Source: Calcarisporiella thermophila CBS 279.70
Lineage: Eukaryota; Fungi; Calcarisporiellomycota
DNA: 64,000 nt
Reading direction: 5' to 3'
Assembly: GCF_041956535.1 (NCBI RefSeq)
Contig: NW_027192194.1
Span: forward strand, 1,147,531-1,211,530
The notes under the pieces are model-generated. The model made no database searches and had not been told where the DNA came from. It saw only the letters and a program-made list of their open reading frames with translations. The position numbers and the translations under genes are program-made. Below are positions 21,992-31,584 of the stretch, in pieces (position 1 is the first letter of the stretch; each line of letters opens with the position of its first letter).

Positions 21992-24900
21992 ATGTCAACC
22001 AACGAGGAATCAAAGCCCTCGCAAGAGGTGTCGCCAGGAATGGCACCAGAGGCTTCATCACAAGACACGGGTAACCATGTCGTGAACATCGTCGCCCCGG
22101 CAGAGCCTATTAAGGAGGAGGCCGGCGCACCTCATCCCTCGCCATCCGAGGCAACTCCTTCCGACACAGCACCTTTTGCATTTAGCATTTCACAACTTCA
22201 AAACCTCTTGGATCCTAAGAACATCCAGCTCCTAAAGGACTTGGGCGGTCTACGAGGCATCATCCGCGGCCTCCATACCAATGCTACCCTTGGACTGGAC
22301 GTACGGGAACCCACCCATCTTCCGCCTGTCAGCATTCAAGATATTCTACAAGAAAACACTACATCTGGTGTAAATAGTTCAGAGGTGGAGAAGGAGACGA
22401 GAGTCGACGTCGGAGCAGTAGCAGCAGCATCAGACCTAAGCGAAAAGCTCAATGGTAACTCCTCGCCCAGCAAGGTAGCCGAGACAAGTCCCGACGCTTT
22501 TGTGGAGAGGAAGCGGGTCTACGGAACTAATCGCCTGCCCACCAAAAAGACAAAGAACATTTTTCAACTGATGTGGGCCGCTTACCAGGAAAAGATTCTT
22601 GTAGGATATCAAATGGAGTCGTCTTGGTCCAAACCAAGTTGGCCGTGCACTAACGGTTTTCGTTGGATTTGTAGATTCTCTTAACCGTGGCCGCCCTGGT
22701 TTCCCTTGCTCTGGGAATTTATGAGGACGTGTCGACGCCCAACGAGATACAGCATGTTTCTAGCGATGGCACCTCCTCCACCGAATACAGTCCCGATGTA
22801 AGATGGGTAGAGGGGTTTGCCATTATTGTGGCGATCGCCATTGTCGTGCTTGTGGGAAGTTTGAACGATTACCAGAAGGAAAAGCAGTTCCAAAAGCTCA
22901 ACGCCAAAAAAGAGGACCGTTTAGTGAGGGTAAGCTGGCACGCGTCGATTTGCACGGATGGGCATGGTGACTGACTGACCGTTTGCTGTCGTGCTTTAGG
23001 TGACCCGAGGCGGCGTCCAGAGCTATATTTCGATCCACGATCTCCTGGTGGGCGATGTCGTCCACATTGAGCCCGGAGATATCATCGCTGCCGATGGTGT
23101 GTTTATCTCCGGCCACAACCTGAAATGTGATGAGTCGGCCGCCACGGGTGAATCTGACGCGGTTCGCAAGCTTGACTGGGAAGAATGTTACCGGCGGTAC
23201 GAGGCAAGCCTTTATGAGGATGACGCGCGCTCAGTGTCCGATGTTTCTGCCCTCTCTCCCGATGGCCTACGGGGGCCCCCGCTTCTCCCTCTTCCGGACC
23301 AGGATCCCACGGGGAACCTGATGCCACCAAGCACCGCAGATGCGCGTCGCCTCGACGCCCATGGAAAGAGGTCGCTGGAGAGGACCCATGTGCCAGCCGC
23401 TCGCGCTCACAGCCTTCCCGACCCTTTTCTCCTCTCCGGATCCAAGGTTCTGGAGGGAGTCGGCTCATACGTTGTGATCGCAGTGGGCGTGCACAGTTTC
23501 CACGGCAAGACGATGATGGCCCTGCGCCAGGAAAATGAAGGAACACCCTTGCAGGCGAAGCTCAACGATCTTGCCGAGAAGATCGCCAAGTTCGGGCTTG
23601 CCGCCTCGCTCACCATGCTGCTTGTGCTGCTGATCAAGTTCTTCGTTTCGTTCAGGTACGGCGTGCCTACCGCCACCGCCGCCGTGGATAACGTGGTCCA
23701 GATCATCATCTCCACGATCACCGTGATCGTGGTGGCCATTCCGGAAGGGCTTCCGCTCGCAGTCACGCTGGCCCTCGCTTTCGCCACAACACGAATGCTG
23801 CGCGACAACAACTTGGTGCGCGTGCTGGCCGCTTGCGAGACGATGGGCAACGCAACCACCATCTGCTCGGACAAGACGGGAACTCTCACTCAGAATCGCA
23901 TGACCGTGGTCGCTGGTACCATTGGGGCTTACCTCCGCTTCACTGCCGATCCCACCGAGGAGAACGAGCGCCGGATGGCCGCATACCGCCGAAGCACGGG
24001 CCTGCTGTCGAAGTCAGAATCGGACACGCAAGCCACACAGCCATCGGCCGGCGGAGGAAGCACGATGATGTCGCGCGAGGAGACGGAGATCAGCCTGACG
24101 TACCTGAAGGGCGGAAAGCCCCGCGGGAACGTACCGCCTCCCCGGAAGATTGAAGCCATCAAAGATCTCTCGAAAGCCACTCCCTCCACCACCCTCAACC
24201 TGCTTCACGAAAACATCTGCATCAACTCCACCGCATTTGAGAGCACCGATGACCGGGGGCAGCCCGCTTTCGTGGGCAACAAAACGGAGACGGCCCTGCT
24301 TGGCTTCTCAAAGGATATCGGCATCGGCAACTACGAGGAAATTCGAAACCGGTACCCCGTGGTGCAGGTGTTCCCCTTCAGCTCGGATCGTAAGGCCATG
24401 GCCACGGTGGTGGAGATCCCATCGGATGGCGAGAACAAGAAGGTCTACCGCATGTTCGTCAAGGGCGCCAGCGAGGTGATCTTGAGTAAATCGCAGCGAA
24501 TTGTAGAGACCACCAGCACGGCCACCTCCTCCCAGACCGAGCAGCCGGAGATTGTGCCGATCTCCGCCGAGATTAACAAGCGACTCCAGAAGATCATCGT
24601 CAGCTACGCGACCAAGAGTCTGCGAACGATCGGTATTGCCTACCGGGACTTCGAGTCGTGGCCTCCTGTCCCCACCCCCTCGCAACCCCTCCGCCTGGAG
24701 ATCCCCGTTCCCGGCGCGCCCACCACTGAGGCGGATGCTGAACGGGAGGACGGCGACAAGGATGAGGTGAAGTACGAGGACCTGGTGAATGCGGAGGGCG
24801 GCCTCGTGCTCCAAGCCATCGTCGGTATCGAGGATCCTTTGCGGGAGGGTGTCACCGATGCGGTCCGACGGTGCCAGAATGCGGGCATCTTTGTGCGCAT

Positions 24901-26377
24901 GGTCACAGGCGATAATATCCTTACTGCCAAGTCCATTGCCCGCCAGTGTGGCATTTACACCCAGGGAGGTCTGATCATGGAGGGGCCCACGTTCCGCCAA
25001 CTCTCCTCCGAGGAGATGGACCGCGTCATTCCGCGCCTCCAGGTCCTGGCGCGATCGAGCCCCGAGGATAAGCGGATTTTGGTCAGCAAGTTGAAGGAGA
25101 TGAATGAGGTGGTCGCGGTGACGGGTGACGGAACCAACGACGGCCCCGCGCTCAAGATGGCGGATATTGGATTCTCGATGGGCATTGCCGGCACCGAGGT
25201 CGCGAAGGAGGCCAGTAGCATTATCTTGATGGACGATAACTTCTCCAGCATTGTGAAGGCCGTGATGTGGGGAAGATCCGTCAACGACAGCGTCAAGAAG
25301 TTCCTCCAGGTAAATACTGAATGCTTTTGCCTCAGGGAGGGGGGGGGGGGGCGCATCCAAGGATAGACGGAGCCATACTTACCCCCTATGCTTTTCTCTC
25401 TAGTTCCAACTCACCGTCAACGTTACCGCCGTGCTGCTCACCTTCATCTCGGCTGCCTCCAGCAACGAGGAGAAGGCTGCCCTGACTCCCGTGCAGCTTC
25501 TTTGGGTCAACTTGATCATGGACACGTTTGCCGCCCTCGCCCTGGCCACCGACCCCCCCACCGACGAAATTCTCAAGCGGCAACCCGAGTCACGCCGCGG
25601 CCCTCTGATCTCCATCCCAATGTGGAAGATGATCTTGGGACAATCGCTCTACCAGCTTGCCGTCACCCTGATCTTGCTCTATGCCGGGCGAAGCATCATG
25701 TTGTACCAAGACTCCGCGGTCGACGAGAAGCGTTTGAGAACCTTGGTGTTCAACACTTTTGTGTTCTGCCAGATCTTCAATGAATTGAAGTAAGTCCCTC
25801 CTCCTCCCGCCTCTCCCGCCTCTCCCGATGGGGGGGAAGAAAGCAACGCACCCTCCGATACTAACCTGTCCTCTTATCTAGCTGCCGTAACCTAGGCAAT
25901 GAGCTGAACGTGTTCCGCGGCATCCACCGCAACATCTACTTCATTTCGATCTTCTTTATCATGGTCCTGGGCCAGGTGCTGATCACCCAATTTGGAGGGC
26001 CTGCCTTCCAGACCTACGGTCTCGGCGGGATCGAGTGGGCCGTCTCGATTGTGGTGGGCGCCATCTCGCTGGTGGTGGGGGTCATCCTCCGCCTCATCCC
26101 CGACGAGCTTATCGAGTTCATCTTCAAGCTGTTCGGAGTCAACTTCAAACCCCTCTACGTCAAACCCCGTGTCACCTACAAGGCCAACAACAAGCAGATC
26201 GAGTGGCAGTCGCCCATTACCCAGGTCCGCAACGAGCTCTCGGTGTTCAAGTCGGTGCGTGGAGGCCGGCTCCAGGGCATTTCCCACGGCAAGCCCGAGA
26301 CATCGCACCTGGCCGCGGCAATGCTGCCGTCGCTGGTGGCCACGAGCGTGGGGGCATCCATTCATGATGAAAAATAG
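21992..26377 (+). CDS. PMC1: P2B Ca2+-transporting ATPase (PMCA/Pmc1); exons 21992-22600, 22675-22929, 23000-25309, 25404-25789, 25882-26377
   Basis: DESAATGES, VVAIPEGLPLAVT, CSDKTGTLT, KGASE, MVTGDN, TGDGTNDGPAL, LLWVNLIMDTFAALALAT, C-terminal FKSVRGGRL. Confidence 0.97.
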
Positions 26378-26920: not shown

Positions 26921-29900
26921 ATGAAGCGGCACAACCTTGGACTTCGGCAATATGTCCTCTTGCTGTTACTAGCAACCAGCTTCCCGGCCGTCCACCCTAA
27001 TCCCGTGTTCAACTCGAGTAAGTTTGCGCGTGTGGCCATTCTTCGGATGAGCCATTGTGCCTCAGTGTGCTAGTGTTTGCTTTTGTGCTCACCATTAACC
27101 TTTGAACTCCTGATCCCTCTTCCTCCCCCCTTCAGTCAACGCGGTCGACTTAAATGGAAATCAATGTCCGGCCTACACGAAACGTGATGCGGTGTGCCCC
27201 GTCCTTTGTGTGCCTGACATCTCACAGTGCCCTCAGCAGGTGGGCTCCGCCGCCTGTCCGTCCGGCATGAGCCTGTGCTCGGATGGAAAGTGCAAATCAT
27301 CGTGCGGCCAAGCCAAAAATCCTTGCCTGTGCGGAAATGATCCTGCAAGCGCACCGCGCCAGTTCGTGCCGTGTTTTACAGGCTTCACGACGGATGTTCG
27401 CTACCACGCCTCGTCCAACACAACGGCAGCCACAAGACAGGCTTGCGAGTCGGCACTAGGGCTGTCCAACGTGTCCACCGCCTTTGATCTTAGCAGCCAA
27501 AATCGGTTCTGGTTGAATTGTCCGGCGCAGAATGCCGCGGCTTCCTTCACGTTCGTTGAAACGCAGTGGCTGGTGATCTGGATTCTACTTGGAGCGGTGG
27601 CAGTGCTGCTGCTGACGTGGGTGCTGTATAAAAGCTTCCGCGAACGAGTGCGTATTCGTGCCCTATTGCCGAAGGCGGCCCCTCCTATCATTAACTCTAA
27701 TTTTATGACAGAATGTCCGCTCCCTCTTCAAACCAGCCCCTAACCCCGTGGTCGGTTCTAAGCAAAAGGGCGAGGGTGCTTCGGACGAAACGATGCAGTC
27801 GATCGACAAGGAAAAGCAACCGCAGATAACCGCGGAGAATAGCTCGGACACCGCGTCGACCGACGCCGAAGCCGACAGGATGGTTTTGCACGGCTATCGG
27901 AACGATATCTTTGGCACGGCCATGTTCTACCTCTTCGTCTGCTACTCGCTGGGCTGGTTCTGTTGGCTGGGGGTGATCACCGCGGATTACTACGGAGCGG
28001 TCAACGGCGTTGAGTTTGGCCTCTACCTGGACTTCTTGACCTCTTCGGCCACATTTATTGCGGTTTGGTATGCCACCGCCATCTGGATCATCGTCGTGGT
28101 CACGATACGGAAGCGCGTCCGCAACTTCTTCCGTATCTTGACGCCCCCGTCCCAAGGGCATGTGGTGCAGATTGAGAAGGAGAGGCAGCCGCTTATTTTG
28201 CTGGACGAGGAGTCCTTTTTGCTTGATCTCGTGCGCCGGCTGGAGGCGATCGTCATGCATCTGACCAGATGGGACAGGATCGTGGTCACCGTTCCCCTGG
28301 AGCACACCGCCGCCGGCACGAAGTACTTCAACTTCCAGTGCACGCGATACGTGTACAGCGAAGAGAAGGATCGATTCGACCCCTATGCCTTTGACATAGG
28401 CTCTAGTCACGCAGAGCTGTTGCGGCAGTCCGGGGGTTTGCGAGAGGAGGAGGCCAAATTCCGCCAAGGTAGAGTTGACCCCATTGCCGGCTCAGCCACT
28501 TCTTTTGTTTTTGGCGGCTGCGGATTAACCCACGTTTTTGGATGCACTAGAACTGATCGGGCCAAACTACATCTCGGTCTACGTCCCTAGCTTCCCGGTC
28601 GCCATTCTCCTGGAGTTCACGTCGCTCTTCTACGTATACCAGGGACTCGTTTTATGGGTATGTTATTCTGTGAGGGGTTTCAGCACGGGGATCACAGGTT
28701 TAACAAGCTTGCGCTTTTCTTTCGTTTTCAGTTGTTCTACTATTATTCCTACTACAAAGTGGGGTTGGTGGACACGGCGGTCATCCTACTCTCCGCGATC
28801 ATTAAAGTGCTCATCAGGCTGCACAGCGAAAAGCGCATCAAGAAAATGGCCGAGCATGTCGACCAGTGCAACATCCTGCGCGACGGCCAGTGGGTCGAGA
28901 AATCGACGTCGGACCTGGTCCCCGGCGACATCTTCGAGGTGACCCGGAACAGCACGGTCCCCTGTGATGCCATCTTGCTCACCGGAAATGTGATTGCGGA
29001 CGAGTCCTCCCTCACGGGAGAGCCGCTGCCCATCCGCAAATTCCCGATCAAGGACGACGATGGTCACTACAACCGCAACACCGGCAAGAACAACACGCTG
29101 TTCGCGGGCACCACCATTTCGCAGGCCACCACGCAGGGGTTCGAGTCGGAACGAGTTTACGCGCTCGTCACCCACACCGGGACCCAGACGGACAAGGGCC
29201 AGCTCGTGCATAAGATCCTGTTCCCCAACCCGATTTCCTTCATCTTCAACGAACAAATCAAGCTTGTGATGCTCATCCTTCTGATCTGGGCGGTGGTCAT
29301 CTTTGGCATTTGCGTGTGGTGGACGCGGTCCGCCAGGACTGGCGCCTGGTTCTATGGGATGTTTGTGATCTGTCAGCTCATTTCGCCGCTCCTGCCCGCC
29401 GCACTCGTGGTCGGCCAATCCGTAGCGGCCAATCGTCTGCGCGTCAAGCATATCTACTGTGTCGATCTTCCCCGTATTATTATTGCGGGCAAGGTGCAGA
29501 TTTTCTGCTTCGACAAAACGGGCACGCTCACCAAGGAAGGCCTCGAGTTCCACGGTGCGGTCCCAGCCCTCCCGTTGGCTGGGAGGGGGGAGGGACTAGA
29601 GCCTCCACCGGATGGGAATGGGGAAAAGGAGGACGTCAAGGATGAGCAGGGCTCCTCCGCAGAAGCACAAAATGATGGCGCCACCAAGTTCGATGAGCTC
29701 TGTGGCGACTACGCGAGGCTCCCGCGCCTAATCCAGCTTGGGATGGCTTCCTGTCACGCCGTCACCACTCTCGACGACCAGCTGATCGGCAATCCCGTGG
29801 ACATCGAGATGTTCCGCGCCACTGGATGGGCCCTACGCGCGGCCGACAAGGACTCGGACTTCCTCGACACCATCGACCCCCCCGCACAGGAGGCGAAGGG

Positions 29901-31584
29901 CCACGTGGGTCCGGTGCAGGTCGTGAAGCGCTTTGAATTTGTGCACGCGCGCGCCTCCATGTCCGTGGCGGTGCTCGACACGGTAACAGGACACTTGCAC
30001 GTGTTCGTCAAGGGCTCGTTCGAACGCATCAAGGAGGCGGTCCGCCCGGAGACGCTGCCTGCCGATTTTGACGACGCGACCGCGAGCCTTGCGCGCCAGG
30101 GGTGCTATGTGCTTGCCATCGCGCACCGGGACCTGGGGCCGAGGGCGGATCTCGACGTGATTCGCGGGTGGACGCGGGACGAGATCGAGGCGGAGGTGGG
30201 CCTTCTCGGGCTGATTGTGTTCCGGAACAATCTCAAGAGCGACACGGCCGCGGCGATTGCGGAGCTGAAGCAGGGCGACACGCGCACGGTGATGATCACG
30301 GGCGACACGGCCCTGACTGGGGTCTACATTGCGCGGCAATGTGGCATGATCCCGGCGGACACCCGCATCCTCCTGGGGGACGTGGACACGTCGGGCGCCG
30401 TCACCTGGGTCGATGTCGACCGCATCTCTGCGGGCCCCGTGGAGCTCGACACCTCGAACCCGAGGACAGAACTGGCGGTGACGGGCAAGGCCTTCGTCAA
30501 ACTCGCCGAGACGGACCAAATCCGGCCGCACCTCTTGAACATCCGCGTGTTCGCGCGCATGACGCCGGTGGACAAGGTGCACTGCGTGCAGCTGCACATG
30601 GAGCGGGGCATCACGGCGATGTGCGGCGACGGCGGCAACGACTGCGGGGCGCTCCGGTCCGCGCACGTGGGGCTCGCGCTCTCCGAGGCGGAGGCCTCGA
30701 TCGTCTCGCCCTTCTCGACCAACCGGCGCACCATTGCCTCGTGCGTGGAGCTGCTGCGGCAGGGCCGCGCGGCGCTGGCCACGAACCTGGCCGCCTACAA
30801 GTACTTGATCATGTATGGGCAGACGATGGCCATGTTCAAGATCTTCACGTTCTACTGGTCGACGTCGTTGTCGCAGCCGCTGTGGATCGTGGTCGACGCG
30901 TTCATCACCGTGCTGATGTCGTGGGCGGTCACGCAGTCCAAGCCGGCCAAGCACCTTGCGCCCAAGCGGCCCACCGCGCAGATCCTGGGCCCGCAGACCA
31001 TGGCCTCCACCATCGGCCTCGTCGTCATCGACTATCTCTTCCTGTCGATGATCATGTACTTCCTGTACCAGCAGGAGTTCTTCCGCTGCCACGAGTTCAA
31101 CCCCGAGAGCGTGGACACGTCGAAGTGGTGGCTGCTCGGCGACAGCTACGAGGCGGAGCTGTCTGGGTTCGTGGTGCTGTTCCAGTTTGTCAACGCGGGC
31201 GCGATCTTCAACTTCGGGTACATGTTCCGCCGTGCTTGGATCCGCAACTACTGGCTCGTGGCGATCTGGGCGGTGTACTGCATCCTCATCTCGTACGCGA
31301 TGATCGCCGACCCGAACCCGCTCGGCTGCATGTTCCGCATGAACTGCGGCAACCCGCGGGTGCTCGAGGACCTGGGCTATCCCCGCCCCTGGTGGGAGAT
31401 CGAGCCCTACAACCTCGAGCAGGGCCACAACGTGATGCCGTACGCGTTCCGGTGGAAGCTGTGGGCGCTGTGCGTGGCGAACATGCTGGCGGGCCTGCTC
31501 TGGGAGAAGCTCGTCATCCTTGGGCCGGTGCGCGCGTACTTCGCCCGGCGGTATCCGGTGCGACAACACCACTTCAAGCTATAG
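26921..31584 (+). CDS. P5 (P5B/ATP13A-like) P-type ATPase with N-terminal signal peptide and Cys-rich ectodomain; exons 26921-27017, 27136-27647, 27712-28468, 28551-28657, 28732-31584 (1441 aa)
   Basis: LVPGD, DESSLTGEP, SPLLPAAL, CFDKTGTLT, KGSFE, MITGD, FARMTP..K, MCGDGGNDCGAL, EASIVSPF, GRAAL; four GT-AG introns give a 4326-nt stop-free frame. Confidence 0.9.

What the first reader, a model, noticed from the sequence alone, without database searches (positions are those of the whole stretch)
26921..31584. Receptor-like P5 pump: signal peptide and 13-Cys ectodomain fused to a P5-type ATPase
Seen: exon 1 encodes a signal peptide (MKRHNLGLRQYVLLLLLATSFPAVHP). Exon 2 encodes a 13-Cys region (NQCPAY..VCPVLCVPDISQCP..ACPSGMSLCSDGKCKSSC..NPCLC..VPC..QAC..LNC) with N-glycosylation sequons NTT and NVS, then one TM helix. 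Canonical introns join these in frame to a complete P5 ATPase (1441 aa), although the ORF track splits it into four unrelated-looking ORFs. Known: characterised P5A (Spf1/ATP13A1) and P5B (Ypk9/ATP13A2-5) pumps have no cleavable signal peptide or disulfide-rich ectodomain. Inference: a distinct P5 subtype whose luminal or extracellular domain senses or captures a ligand, acting like a built-in accessory subunit. Similar unannotated proteins may exist in other early-diverging eukaryotes.
Basis: partly seen in the sequence, partly recalled or inferred. Interest (0 to 1): 0.8.

Follow-up and report, generated by a model that had tools for sequence, protein, structure and literature searches.

The report
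P5 pump with built-in cysteine-rich ectodomain
This fungal gene encodes a P5-type transport ATPase that carries, fused to its front end, a secretion signal, a 13-cysteine domain on the far side of the membrane and an extra membrane helix. The layout is shared by six copies in this genome and by relatives from fungi to diatoms, and I found no paper that describes it.

Summary
A five-exon gene (26921-31584, + strand, four GT..AG introns) encodes a 1441-aa protein. It has a signal-peptide-like leader, a roughly 135-aa domain with 13 invariant Cys and a positionally conserved N-glycosylation sequon, one extra helix (TM0), a disordered linker, a P5-type N-terminal domain with two long helices, and an intact P5 ATPase core.

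The genome is Calcarisporiella thermophila. Its ectodomain exon occurs exactly six times, each copy just upstream of one of six paralogous pump cores. More than 100 database proteins of early-diverging fungi share the layout, as do an ichthyosporean, a plasmodiophorid, gregarine-like apicomplexans and, by profile-profile match, diatoms and Paulinella.

The pump is neither P5A nor canonical P5B. Its M4 motif reads SPLLP, not PPALP. Two of three P5B-invariant polyamine-binding Asp are replaced (F702, Q1206). In a P5A-rooted tree it falls in a well-supported clade of (S/P)PLLP pumps. That clade's taxa match the "P5C" clade named in 2025 (TgFLP12), whose paper does not mention this N-terminal module.

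The ectodomain matched no solved fold or Pfam family. I read it as a fused, accessory-subunit-like exoplasmic cap; a role in ligand sensing is untested.

The scan had already found this architecture on paralogues (s1-593858, s1-593893).

The parts
26921..27017 (+). Exon 1: start codon and signal-peptide-like leader (n-region with K2, R3, R9; h-region YVLLLLLATSF). It ends in ..NPVFNS.
   Evidence: The spliced FNS|INAVDLNG matches the family consensus FN(T/N)VNGxDxNG across the junction.
27018..27135 (+). Intron 1 (118 nt, GTAAGT..CAG).
27136..27647 (+). Exon 2: the 13-Cys ectodomain plus the extra transmembrane helix TM0 and the juxtamembrane YKSFRER.
   Evidence: 13 invariant Cys, W125, W161, K165, E169. 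(tblastn of P0001 residues 29-192, 45% identity, E 1e-33). (AF2 pLDDT 86).
27165..27521 (+). Cysteine-rich core, from the first to the last of the 13 Cys (residues 43-161). It includes the sequons NTT (27417-27425) and NVS (27468-27476).
   Evidence: The NTT sequon is in the same alignment column in 11 of 24 homologues and within 3 columns in 17 of 24.
27570..27626 (+). TM0 (LVIWILLGAVAVLLLTWVL), the single-pass helix that returns the chain to the cytosol.
   Evidence: hydropathy 2.79; helix 142-169 of exon 2, pLDDT 96-98. The TM0 region also aligns with the oomycete clade.
27648..27711 (+). Intron 2 (64 nt, GTGCGT..CAG). If it were retained, the frame would stop at 27741-27743.
27712..28468 (+). 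Exon 3: a disordered cytosolic linker, helices Ma (27913-27978) and Mb (28051-28107), and the beta-rich P5 N-terminal domain.
   Evidence: AF2 pLDDT 80.5; first 45 residues below 50; helices 66-93 and 108-131. (only P5 ATPases match: ATP13A2 at E 1e-3, Spf1, ATP13A1). (weak profile match to the ATP13A2 N-terminal domain).
28469..28550 (+). Intron 3 (82 nt, GTAGAG..TAG).
28551..28657 (+). Exon 4: end of the N-terminal domain and M1 (..YVYQGLVLW).
   Evidence: The alignment is gap-free across both junctions (M1-M2 block).
28658..28731 (+). Intron 4 (74 nt, GTATGT..CAG).
28732..31584 (+). Exon 5: M2-M10 and the A, P and N domains, with TGE 29014-29022, M4 SPLLP 29383-29397, DKTGT 29512-29526, GDGGND 30625-30642 and the stop at 31582-31584.
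   Evidence: PF00122, PF00702. (TIGR01657, 591 bits). (ATP13A2 357 bits, Ypk9-type 339, Spf1 251)..

Best explanation
This is a single gene for a P5-type ATPase of the non-P5A, non-P5B lineage, very probably the 'P5C' clade of PMC12217143.

Shown:
- A leader peptide and a roughly 135-aa disulfide-rich, glycosylatable domain precede one extra helix (TM0). That places the N-terminus on the luminal or extracellular side.
- The chain then continues in the cytosol through a disordered linker into the usual P5 N-terminal domain (Ma, Mb, beta-domain) and an intact catalytic core.
- The module is old. It is homologous between fungal, ichthyosporean, plasmodiophorid, gregarine-like and diatom/Paulinella pumps. 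In this genome it never occurs apart from a pump.

Inferred:
- The ectodomain with TM0 works as a covalently attached accessory subunit. It would play the part that the beta subunit plays for Na,K-ATPase and that CDC50 plays for P4 flippases: stabilising and escorting the pump, and capping the exoplasmic mouth of the M1-M2-M4-M6 pathway.
- Known P5B pumps, and the one studied P5C pump, take up their substrate at that mouth.
- The substrate is probably not a polyamine. The pocket keeps the aromatic residues and one Asp but loses the other P5B acidic ligands, so a less cationic or amphipathic substrate is more likely.
For: One gene:
- All four introns are GT..AG and in frame.
- Homologues align gap-free across the junctions.
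- The ectodomain exon occurs exactly 6 times in the genome. Each copy lies 1.0-1.6 kb upstream, on the same strand, of one of the 6 paralogous cores.
- Four paralogues have public full-length fused models (P0001, P0002, P0065, P0080).
- Transcriptome-derived ORFs carry both parts on one mRNA in relatives: Amoebidium P0132, and Selenidium and Rhytidocystis with a similar N-terminal start.
- 118 of 127 full-length relatives have a hydrophobic leader.
- No free-standing 93-297-aa relative was found.

Exoplasmic location:
- Leader plus TM0.
- 13 invariant Cys.
- A positionally conserved sequon.

Lineage:
- M4 reads SPLLP.
- In a tree rooted on P5A, all (S/P)PLLP pumps form a clade with SH-aLRT 100, apart from the PPALP pumps.
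- PF12409 is absent here but present in the ATP13A2-type hits.
- The clade's taxa are fungi, diatoms, oomycetes and alveolates, as stated for P5C (PMC12217143).

Ancient module:
- hhalign of the fungal against the diatom N-termini gives probability 98.6%, E 1e-15.

Pocket:
- ATP13A2 D458 corresponds to F702 (P5B 17/17 Asp) and D955 to Q1206.
- D962 (D1213) and F958 (W1209) are kept (ligand roles from bioRxiv 10.1101/2021.05.28.446245).

Intact catalytic motifs.
Against: - There are no transcript data for this gene.
- The accessory-subunit role rests on analogy alone. I could not inspect contacts between the ectodomain and the pump's exoplasmic loops, and the domain has no known fold to lean on.
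- TgFLP12 itself was not placed in my tree, so P5C membership rests on taxon distribution and on excluding P5A and P5B.
- The tree is a quick LG+G4 search with a long, composite outgroup.
- The window's own protein, and that of the C31 paralogue, were not among the database proteins, so the public annotation may model them differently.
- Thirteen Cys is an odd number, so one Cys is free or pairs elsewhere.
Confidence: 0.6

Rival explanations
1. Two genes: a small type I membrane glycoprotein (exons 1-2, ending at the in-frame stop at 27741-27743 if intron 2 is retained), and a separate P5 ATPase starting at the ATG near 27793.
For: Read-through of intron 2 gives a stop after 31 extra codons, and an ATG lies at 27793. 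The linker after TM0 is poorly conserved and disordered. There are no RNA data.
Against: - All six ectodomain copies in the genome sit directly upstream of a pump core, and none sits elsewhere.
- More than 100 gene models, and transcriptome ORFs from other species, are fused.
- No free-standing relatives of 93-297 aa were found.
- Intron 2 has canonical GT..AG ends and keeps the frame.
Confidence: 0.05
2. An ordinary P5B polyamine exporter (Ypk9/ATP13A2 type) that merely gained a lineage-specific N-terminal extension, with the same substrate and mechanism.
For: - The closest solved structures are ATP13A2 and Ypk9-type P5B pumps (357 and 339 bits, against 251 for Spf1).
- Some databases name relatives 'ATP13A3/4/5'.
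- The D962 and F958 equivalents are kept.
Against: - The M4 motif is SPLLP, not the PPALP that defines P5B (PMC10654040).
- The D458 and D955 equivalents are Phe and Gln, and D458N alone abolishes spermine stimulation in ATP13A2.
- The genome also has two genuine PPALPA P5B genes.
- The tree separates the two groups with SH-aLRT 100.
- PF12409 was not detected.
Confidence: 0.12
3. A receptor-like pump: the ectodomain binds a specific external ligand, and that binding switches the ATPase on or off through TM0.
For: The layout resembles single-pass receptors: a disulfide-rich, glycosylated ectodomain, one TM and a flexible cytosolic linker. The six diverged paralogues (34-48% ectodomain identity) could reflect different ligands.
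Against: - No ligand-binding fold or family was recognised.
- The invariant positions are almost only the Cys, which fits a structural scaffold more than a conserved binding site.
- Known P-type ATPase ectodomain partners (beta subunit, CDC50) are structural rather than sensory (established knowledge).
Confidence: 0.15

Closest known systems
P5C-ATPases (TgFLP12 of Toxoplasma, PfATPase3/PF3D7_0504000; PMC12217143)
   Same: Both are P5 pumps that are neither P5A nor P5B. [quoted passage not shown] That is the same set of taxa I find for the (S/P)PLLP clade.
   Different: The paper reports no signal peptide, cysteine-rich domain or extra N-terminal helix ('cysteine' and 'signal peptide' each occur 0 times). 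TgFLP12 is said to have 12 TM helices and no N-terminal targeting signal. Its role as an apicoplast fatty-acid exporter is called a derived state. I could not place its sequence in my tree.
P5B-ATPases (human ATP13A2-5, yeast Ypk9; polyamine exporters of lysosome and vacuole)
   Same: They are the nearest solved structures. They share the core, the DKTGT, TGE and GDGxND motifs, the M6 Asp (D962 equivalent) and the aromatic ligands.
   Different: P5B pumps have PPALP in M4 and the PF12409 N-terminal domain, and they keep the D458 and D955 equivalents. Here these are SPLLP, not detected, and Phe and Gln. P5B pumps have a cytosolic N-terminus with no leader, ectodomain or TM0.
P5A-ATPases (Spf1, ATP13A1; ER transmembrane-helix dislocases)
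   Same: Both have two long N-terminal helices (Ma, Mb) ahead of a beta-rich N-terminal domain.
   Different: P5A pumps have PP[D/E]LPxE in M4 and usually occur as one gene per genome. Here the motif is SPLLPAA, with six copies. The genome's own P5A (PPELPME) lies elsewhere, on contig C2.
Accessory subunits of P-type ATPases: the Na,K/H,K-ATPase beta subunit and CDC50 of P4 flippases (comparison from established knowledge)
   Same: Each is a glycosylated, disulfide-bonded exoplasmic domain anchored by one or two helices beside the pump. These subunits are needed for folding, ER exit and function.
   Different: Those are separate polypeptides with other folds and the opposite or a two-pass topology. 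Here the domain is fused to the pump's N-terminus as a type I (N-out) segment. No sequence or fold similarity was found.

Membership tests
P-type ATPase, type V (P5) | Catalytic motifs DKTGT, TGE and GDGxND, and a match to the P5 family profile | tested here: met
   DKTGT 29512-29526, TGE 29014-29022, GDGGND 30625-30642. TIGR01657 scores 591 bits on exon 5 alone; the cut-off of 618 is for a whole protein, and the joined protein was not scanned. P5 structures are the top PDB hits.
P5B-ATPase | PPALP motif in M4 (PMC10654040) | tested here: not met
   The motif is SPLLP. All 17 P5B sequences compared have PPALP-type motifs, and the two P5B genes of this genome read PPALPA.
P5B-ATPase | Conserved polyamine ligands D458, D955 and D962 (ATP13A2 isoform-3 numbering; 10.1101/2021.05.28.446245) | tested here: not met
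   The equivalents are F702 (P5B Asp 17/17), Q1206 (P5B Asp 15/17) and D1213, which is kept.
P5B-ATPase | P5-ATPase N-terminal domain PF12409 | tested here: not met
   Exon 3 has no Pfam hit at E 0.1. The family's database members lack PF12409, while the ATP13A2-type hits carry it. The fold is nevertheless P5-like.
P5B-ATPase | Groups with PPALP pumps in a phylogeny | tested here: not met
   In a P5A-rooted IQ-TREE (quick search), 63 non-PPALP pumps form a clade with SH-aLRT 100 that excludes all PPALP rows.
P5A-ATPase | PP[D/E]LPxE in M4 | tested here: not met
   The motif is SPLLPAA. The genome's PPELPME gene is at G000:C2.
P5A-ATPase | Two extra N-terminal helices Ma and Mb | tested here: met
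   Hydropathy peaks at residues 274-292 and 317-335. AF2 helices of 28 and 24 residues. This feature alone does not make it a P5A.
P5C-ATPase (PMC12217143) | Clusters with TgFLP12 / PF3D7_0504000 to the exclusion of P5A and P5B | not testable with these tools
   Neither sequence could be fetched by reference, and none appeared among the named hits.
P5C-ATPase (PMC12217143) | Taxon pattern: fungi, diatoms, oomycetes and alveolates; not animals, yeasts or flowering plants | tested here: met
   Named members of the (S/P)PLLP clade are zygomycetes, chytrids, Coelomomyces, Amoebidium, Plasmodiophora, Selenidium, Rhytidocystis, Digyalum, Chromera, Seminavis, Nitzschia, Paulinella, Lagenidium, Albugo and a diplonemid. 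No moss was seen among the 30 names looked up. Amoebidium (an ichthyosporean) is a unicellular relative of animals, not an animal.

The most novel reading that the evidence does not exclude
The leader, 13-Cys ectodomain and TM0 form an ancestral, defining module of a large branch of P5C pumps. It would have been present before opisthokonts and the SAR group (stramenopiles, alveolates, Rhizaria) diverged, and was later swapped (the oomycete 7-Cys domain) or reduced (a roughly 30-aa stub in chromerids and diplonemids). It would be the first P-type ATPase lineage with an accessory-subunit-like exoplasmic domain built into the pump, gating entry of a non-polyamine, possibly lipid-like substrate.
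Probability: 0.4. Interest if true: 0.7.

Novelty: new variant of a known kind. Interest (0 to 1): 0.58.

Why it matters
P5 ATPases are the least understood P-type pumps. P5A and P5B were assigned substrates only in 2020, and the third clade, P5C, has a single studied member.

This gene shows that a large, widespread part of that third lineage carries a conserved exoplasmic cysteine-rich domain and an extra helix. The papers I could search do not describe them.

That gives a concrete handle for experiments: deleting or swapping the domain, mapping its disulfides, and cryo-EM of a thermophile protein. It also bears on how P-type pumps come to depend on accessory subunits. The altered substrate pocket predicts a substrate other than polyamines. 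Members occur in Mucorales, chytrids, plasmodiophorids and diatoms but not in animals.

Tried and rejected
- **Known domain in the ectodomain:** Pfam and NCBIfam gave nothing. The one NCBIfam hit, MPN565 at E 0.048, covers only TM0.
- **Known fold:** Foldseek against PDB had a best E of 2.7. The ESM Atlas shape search gave TM 0.32 or less. VIA-align wide found no chain with Z of 2 or more. The atlas feature search had no usable hit. A profile search against PDB sequences gave E 0.7 or worse.
- **Free-standing ectodomain proteins of 93-297 aa:** none were found. Sizes of 297-796 aa, and other fusions, were not covered.
- **P5A through protein or family search of the genome:** not found among the scored candidates. 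Two candidate loci proved to be P2- and P4-type pumps. A PPELPME DNA pattern finally located it.
- **Species list of the P5C tree:** not present in the paper's text, and no supplements are held.
- **'Separate gene' reading and 'plain P5B' reading:** both considered and rejected, as set out under the rival explanations.
Full report
**Gene model**

The region holds one gene on the + strand. The ATG at 26921 is the first start codon after a stop.

Those three alone leave the frame broken. A fourth intron, 28658-28731 (GTATGT..CAG), is required.

The exons are 26921-27017, 27136-27647, 27712-28468, 28551-28657 and 28732-31584.

Every search used exon translations by reference: window:27138-27647, 27712-28467 and 28732-31581. 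The joined model was built only inside scripts, from window.fa, for hydropathy, motif positions, alignment and trees. Whole-protein family scans and a whole-protein fold were therefore left out.

**What each exon encodes**

- Exon 1 is a leader with a basic n-region and an 11-residue hydrophobic core.
- Exon 2 holds 13 Cys (residues 43-161), two sequons (N127, N144) and a strongly hydrophobic helix, TM0 (residues 178-196).
- Exon 3 begins with about 45 disordered residues. Two long helices and a beta-rich domain follow. An AF2 model (pLDDT 80.5) matches only the N-terminal regions of ATP13A2, Spf1 and ATP13A1.
- Exons 4-5 are a complete P5 core. The evidence is PF00122 and PF00702, TIGR01657 at 591 bits, and TGE, DKTGT and GDGGND.

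With the leader cleaved and TM0 spanning the membrane, the Cys-rich domain is luminal or extracellular. Everything after TM0 then follows the normal P5 topology, whether Ma and Mb span the membrane or dip into it.

**Is it one gene?**

The case rests on comparison.

Earlier scan notes name the genome Calcarisporiella thermophila. I confirmed this: four NCBI proteins of that species are encoded at 97-100% identity at four other loci of G000.

The genome has six paralogous pump cores and exactly six copies of the ectodomain exon. Each copy lies 1.0-1.6 kb upstream, on the same strand, of one core, and none lies elsewhere.

The four public paralogue models, and well over 100 models from Mucoromycota, Zoopagomycota and Entomophthoromycotina, begin with a leader, 13-16 Cys and a TM. 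Of 127 full-length N-termini, 118 have a hydrophobic leader.

Homologues align without gaps across E1/E2 (FNS|INAVDLNG against FN(T/N)VNGxDxNG), E3/E4 and E4/E5. The transcriptome ORF of Amoebidium carries ectodomain and pump on one mRNA. Those of Selenidium and Rhytidocystis begin with the same N-terminal motif, although the fungal profile did not reach E 0.001 on them.

A word-based search for free-standing relatives of 93-297 aa found none.

The window's own protein and the C31 paralogue had no 100% match among database proteins. The public annotation may therefore lack or mis-model them.

**The ectodomain**

In 24 diverse sequences all 13 Cys are invariant, and little else is. The NTT sequon is in the same column in 11 of 24 and within three columns in 17 of 24. 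Both points fit an oxidising, glycosylating compartment.

An AF2 model is confident (pLDDT 86) but poor in regular secondary structure. It matched nothing:

- Foldseek against PDB.
- The ESM Atlas shape search.
- An exhaustive VIA-align run, with no Z of 2 or more.
- The atlas feature search.
- Pfam and NCBIfam.
- A profile search of PDB sequences.

I do not claim a new fold. Disulfide-stapled coil domains score badly in all these tools.

**Which kind of P5 pump**

The nearest solved structures are P5B: ATP13A2 at 357 bits and the Ypk9 type at 339, against Spf1 at 251. Three P5B criteria nevertheless fail.

- The M4 motif is SPLLP, not PPALP. PPALP is the P5B signature according to PMC10654040.
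- Of the Asp residues that coordinate polyamine in ATP13A2 (D458, D955, D962), the equivalents here are F702, Q1206 and D1213. P5B sequences have Asp 17/17, 15/17 and 17/17 at those columns. The 13-Cys family has Phe 20/23, Gln 18/23 and Asp 23/23.
- PF12409 is not detected.

The genome also holds two genuine PPALPA genes and a PPELPME P5A.

An all-against-all HMMER search returned 150 representatives. Every one that is not PPALP carries an (S/P)PLLP-like motif.

I rooted a tree on a composite of the genome's own P5A. In it, the PPALP pumps form a basal grade and all other pumps form one clade (SH-aLRT 100). Within that clade, the fungal/ichthyosporean/plasmodiophorid group, a gregarine-like group and a diatom/Paulinella group sit together (SH-aLRT 89). 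This is a quick LG+G4 tree with a long outgroup, so the deep order is provisional.

**Link to the literature**

Reviews recognise only P5A and P5B (PMC10654040). A 2025 paper names a third clade, P5C. It contains TgFLP12 (an apicoplast fatty-acid exporter) and PfATPase3, and is found in 'fungi, mosses, diatoms, oomycetes and alveolates' but not in animals, yeasts or flowering plants (PMC12217143).

The named members of my (S/P)PLLP clade are exactly such organisms. In this fungus, the family is the only P5 group besides P5A and P5B. I therefore file it as probable P5C. I could not place TgFLP12 itself.

That paper never mentions a signal peptide or cysteines. A 2025 modelling paper notes only an unexplained N-terminal extension in PfATPase3 (PMC12655044). 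Three further full-text searches found no description of an ectodomain on a P5 pump.

**Age of the module**

The diatom-clade pumps (PPLLPTVFV motif; Seminavis, Nitzschia, Paulinella) also have a leader, 13 Cys and a TM. Their N-termini match the fungal profile at hhalign probability 98.6%, E 1e-15.

The oomycete clade has a different 7-Cys domain, and only the TM0 region aligns. A clade with Chromera and a diplonemid has just a roughly 30-aa stub before the first helix.

An N-out extra helix thus looks general for this lineage, and the 13-Cys domain is shared by its largest branch.

**Mechanism**

Shown:
- The topology elements.
- Conservation of the module.
- Its exclusive association with the pump.
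- An intact catalytic core.
- An altered pocket.

Inferred:
- The module acts as a fused counterpart of the beta subunit or CDC50. It would support folding and ER exit, and would cap the exoplasmic mouth.
- P5B pumps take up substrate from that mouth, and so does TgFLP12, moving it from the exoplasmic side to the cytosol.
- The loss of acidic ligands, with the aromatic ones retained, argues for a substrate other than polyamines.

A sensory, receptor-like role is possible but has no support.

**Earlier scan findings**

The scan had already met this architecture on paralogues of the same genome. These are s1-593858, with a follow-up reporting '>150 pumps of early-diverging fungi and a few protists, no paper', and s1-593893. 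The SPLLP motif of this gene had also been noted (s1-588457).

My results agree with those notes. They add the 6-of-6 genomic linkage, the P5C link, the homology with diatom pumps, the rooted tree and the pocket comparison.

**Verdict**

This is a real and well-conserved feature. I rate it a new variant of a known kind, of moderate to good interest.

Noticed in passing
window 21992-25366 (+): A PMCA/Pmc1-type Ca2+ P-type ATPase (TIGR01517, 632 bits) lies directly upstream of the P5 gene on the same strand. A P-type ATPase hit also lies just upstream of the C5 paralogue (G000:C5:764338-764922). The pair may have been duplicated together.
   Followed up: partly
window 26921-31584; G000:C31:93165-97436: The window's protein and the C31 paralogue had no identical entry among database proteins, whereas the C9, C6, C5 and C36 paralogues do (P0001, P0002, P0065, P0080). 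The public annotation may miss or mis-model two of the six genes.
   Followed up: partly
P0141, P0152, P0153, P0172, P0188, P0206 (oomycete clade; Lagenidium, Albugo): Related (S/P)PLLP pumps carry a different N-terminal ectodomain with 7 invariant Cys (YPACP..CC..). Only the TM0 region aligns with the fungal module.
   Followed up: partly
P0155, P0165, P0175, P0207, P0210 (clade with Chromera and a diplonemid): These pumps start with a short 'YPTGP..C..C' stub of about 30 residues before the first helix and have no leader. It looks like a reduced N-out segment.
   Followed up: no
P0212 (Selenidium), P0169/P0168 (Rhytidocystis and kin): The nearest relatives of these gregarine-like apicomplexan pumps outside their own group are the fungal 13-Cys pumps (35-37% identity), not other alveolate pumps. 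This could be an old paralogue or a transfer.
   Followed up: partly
window 26921-31584 against the whole window: The gene's G+C content is 0.60, against 0.495 for the 64-kb window.
   Followed up: no
G000:C2:672500-680500 (L018): The genome's P5A gene (PPELPME) is cut into many short exons, unlike the five-exon window gene.
   Followed up: partly
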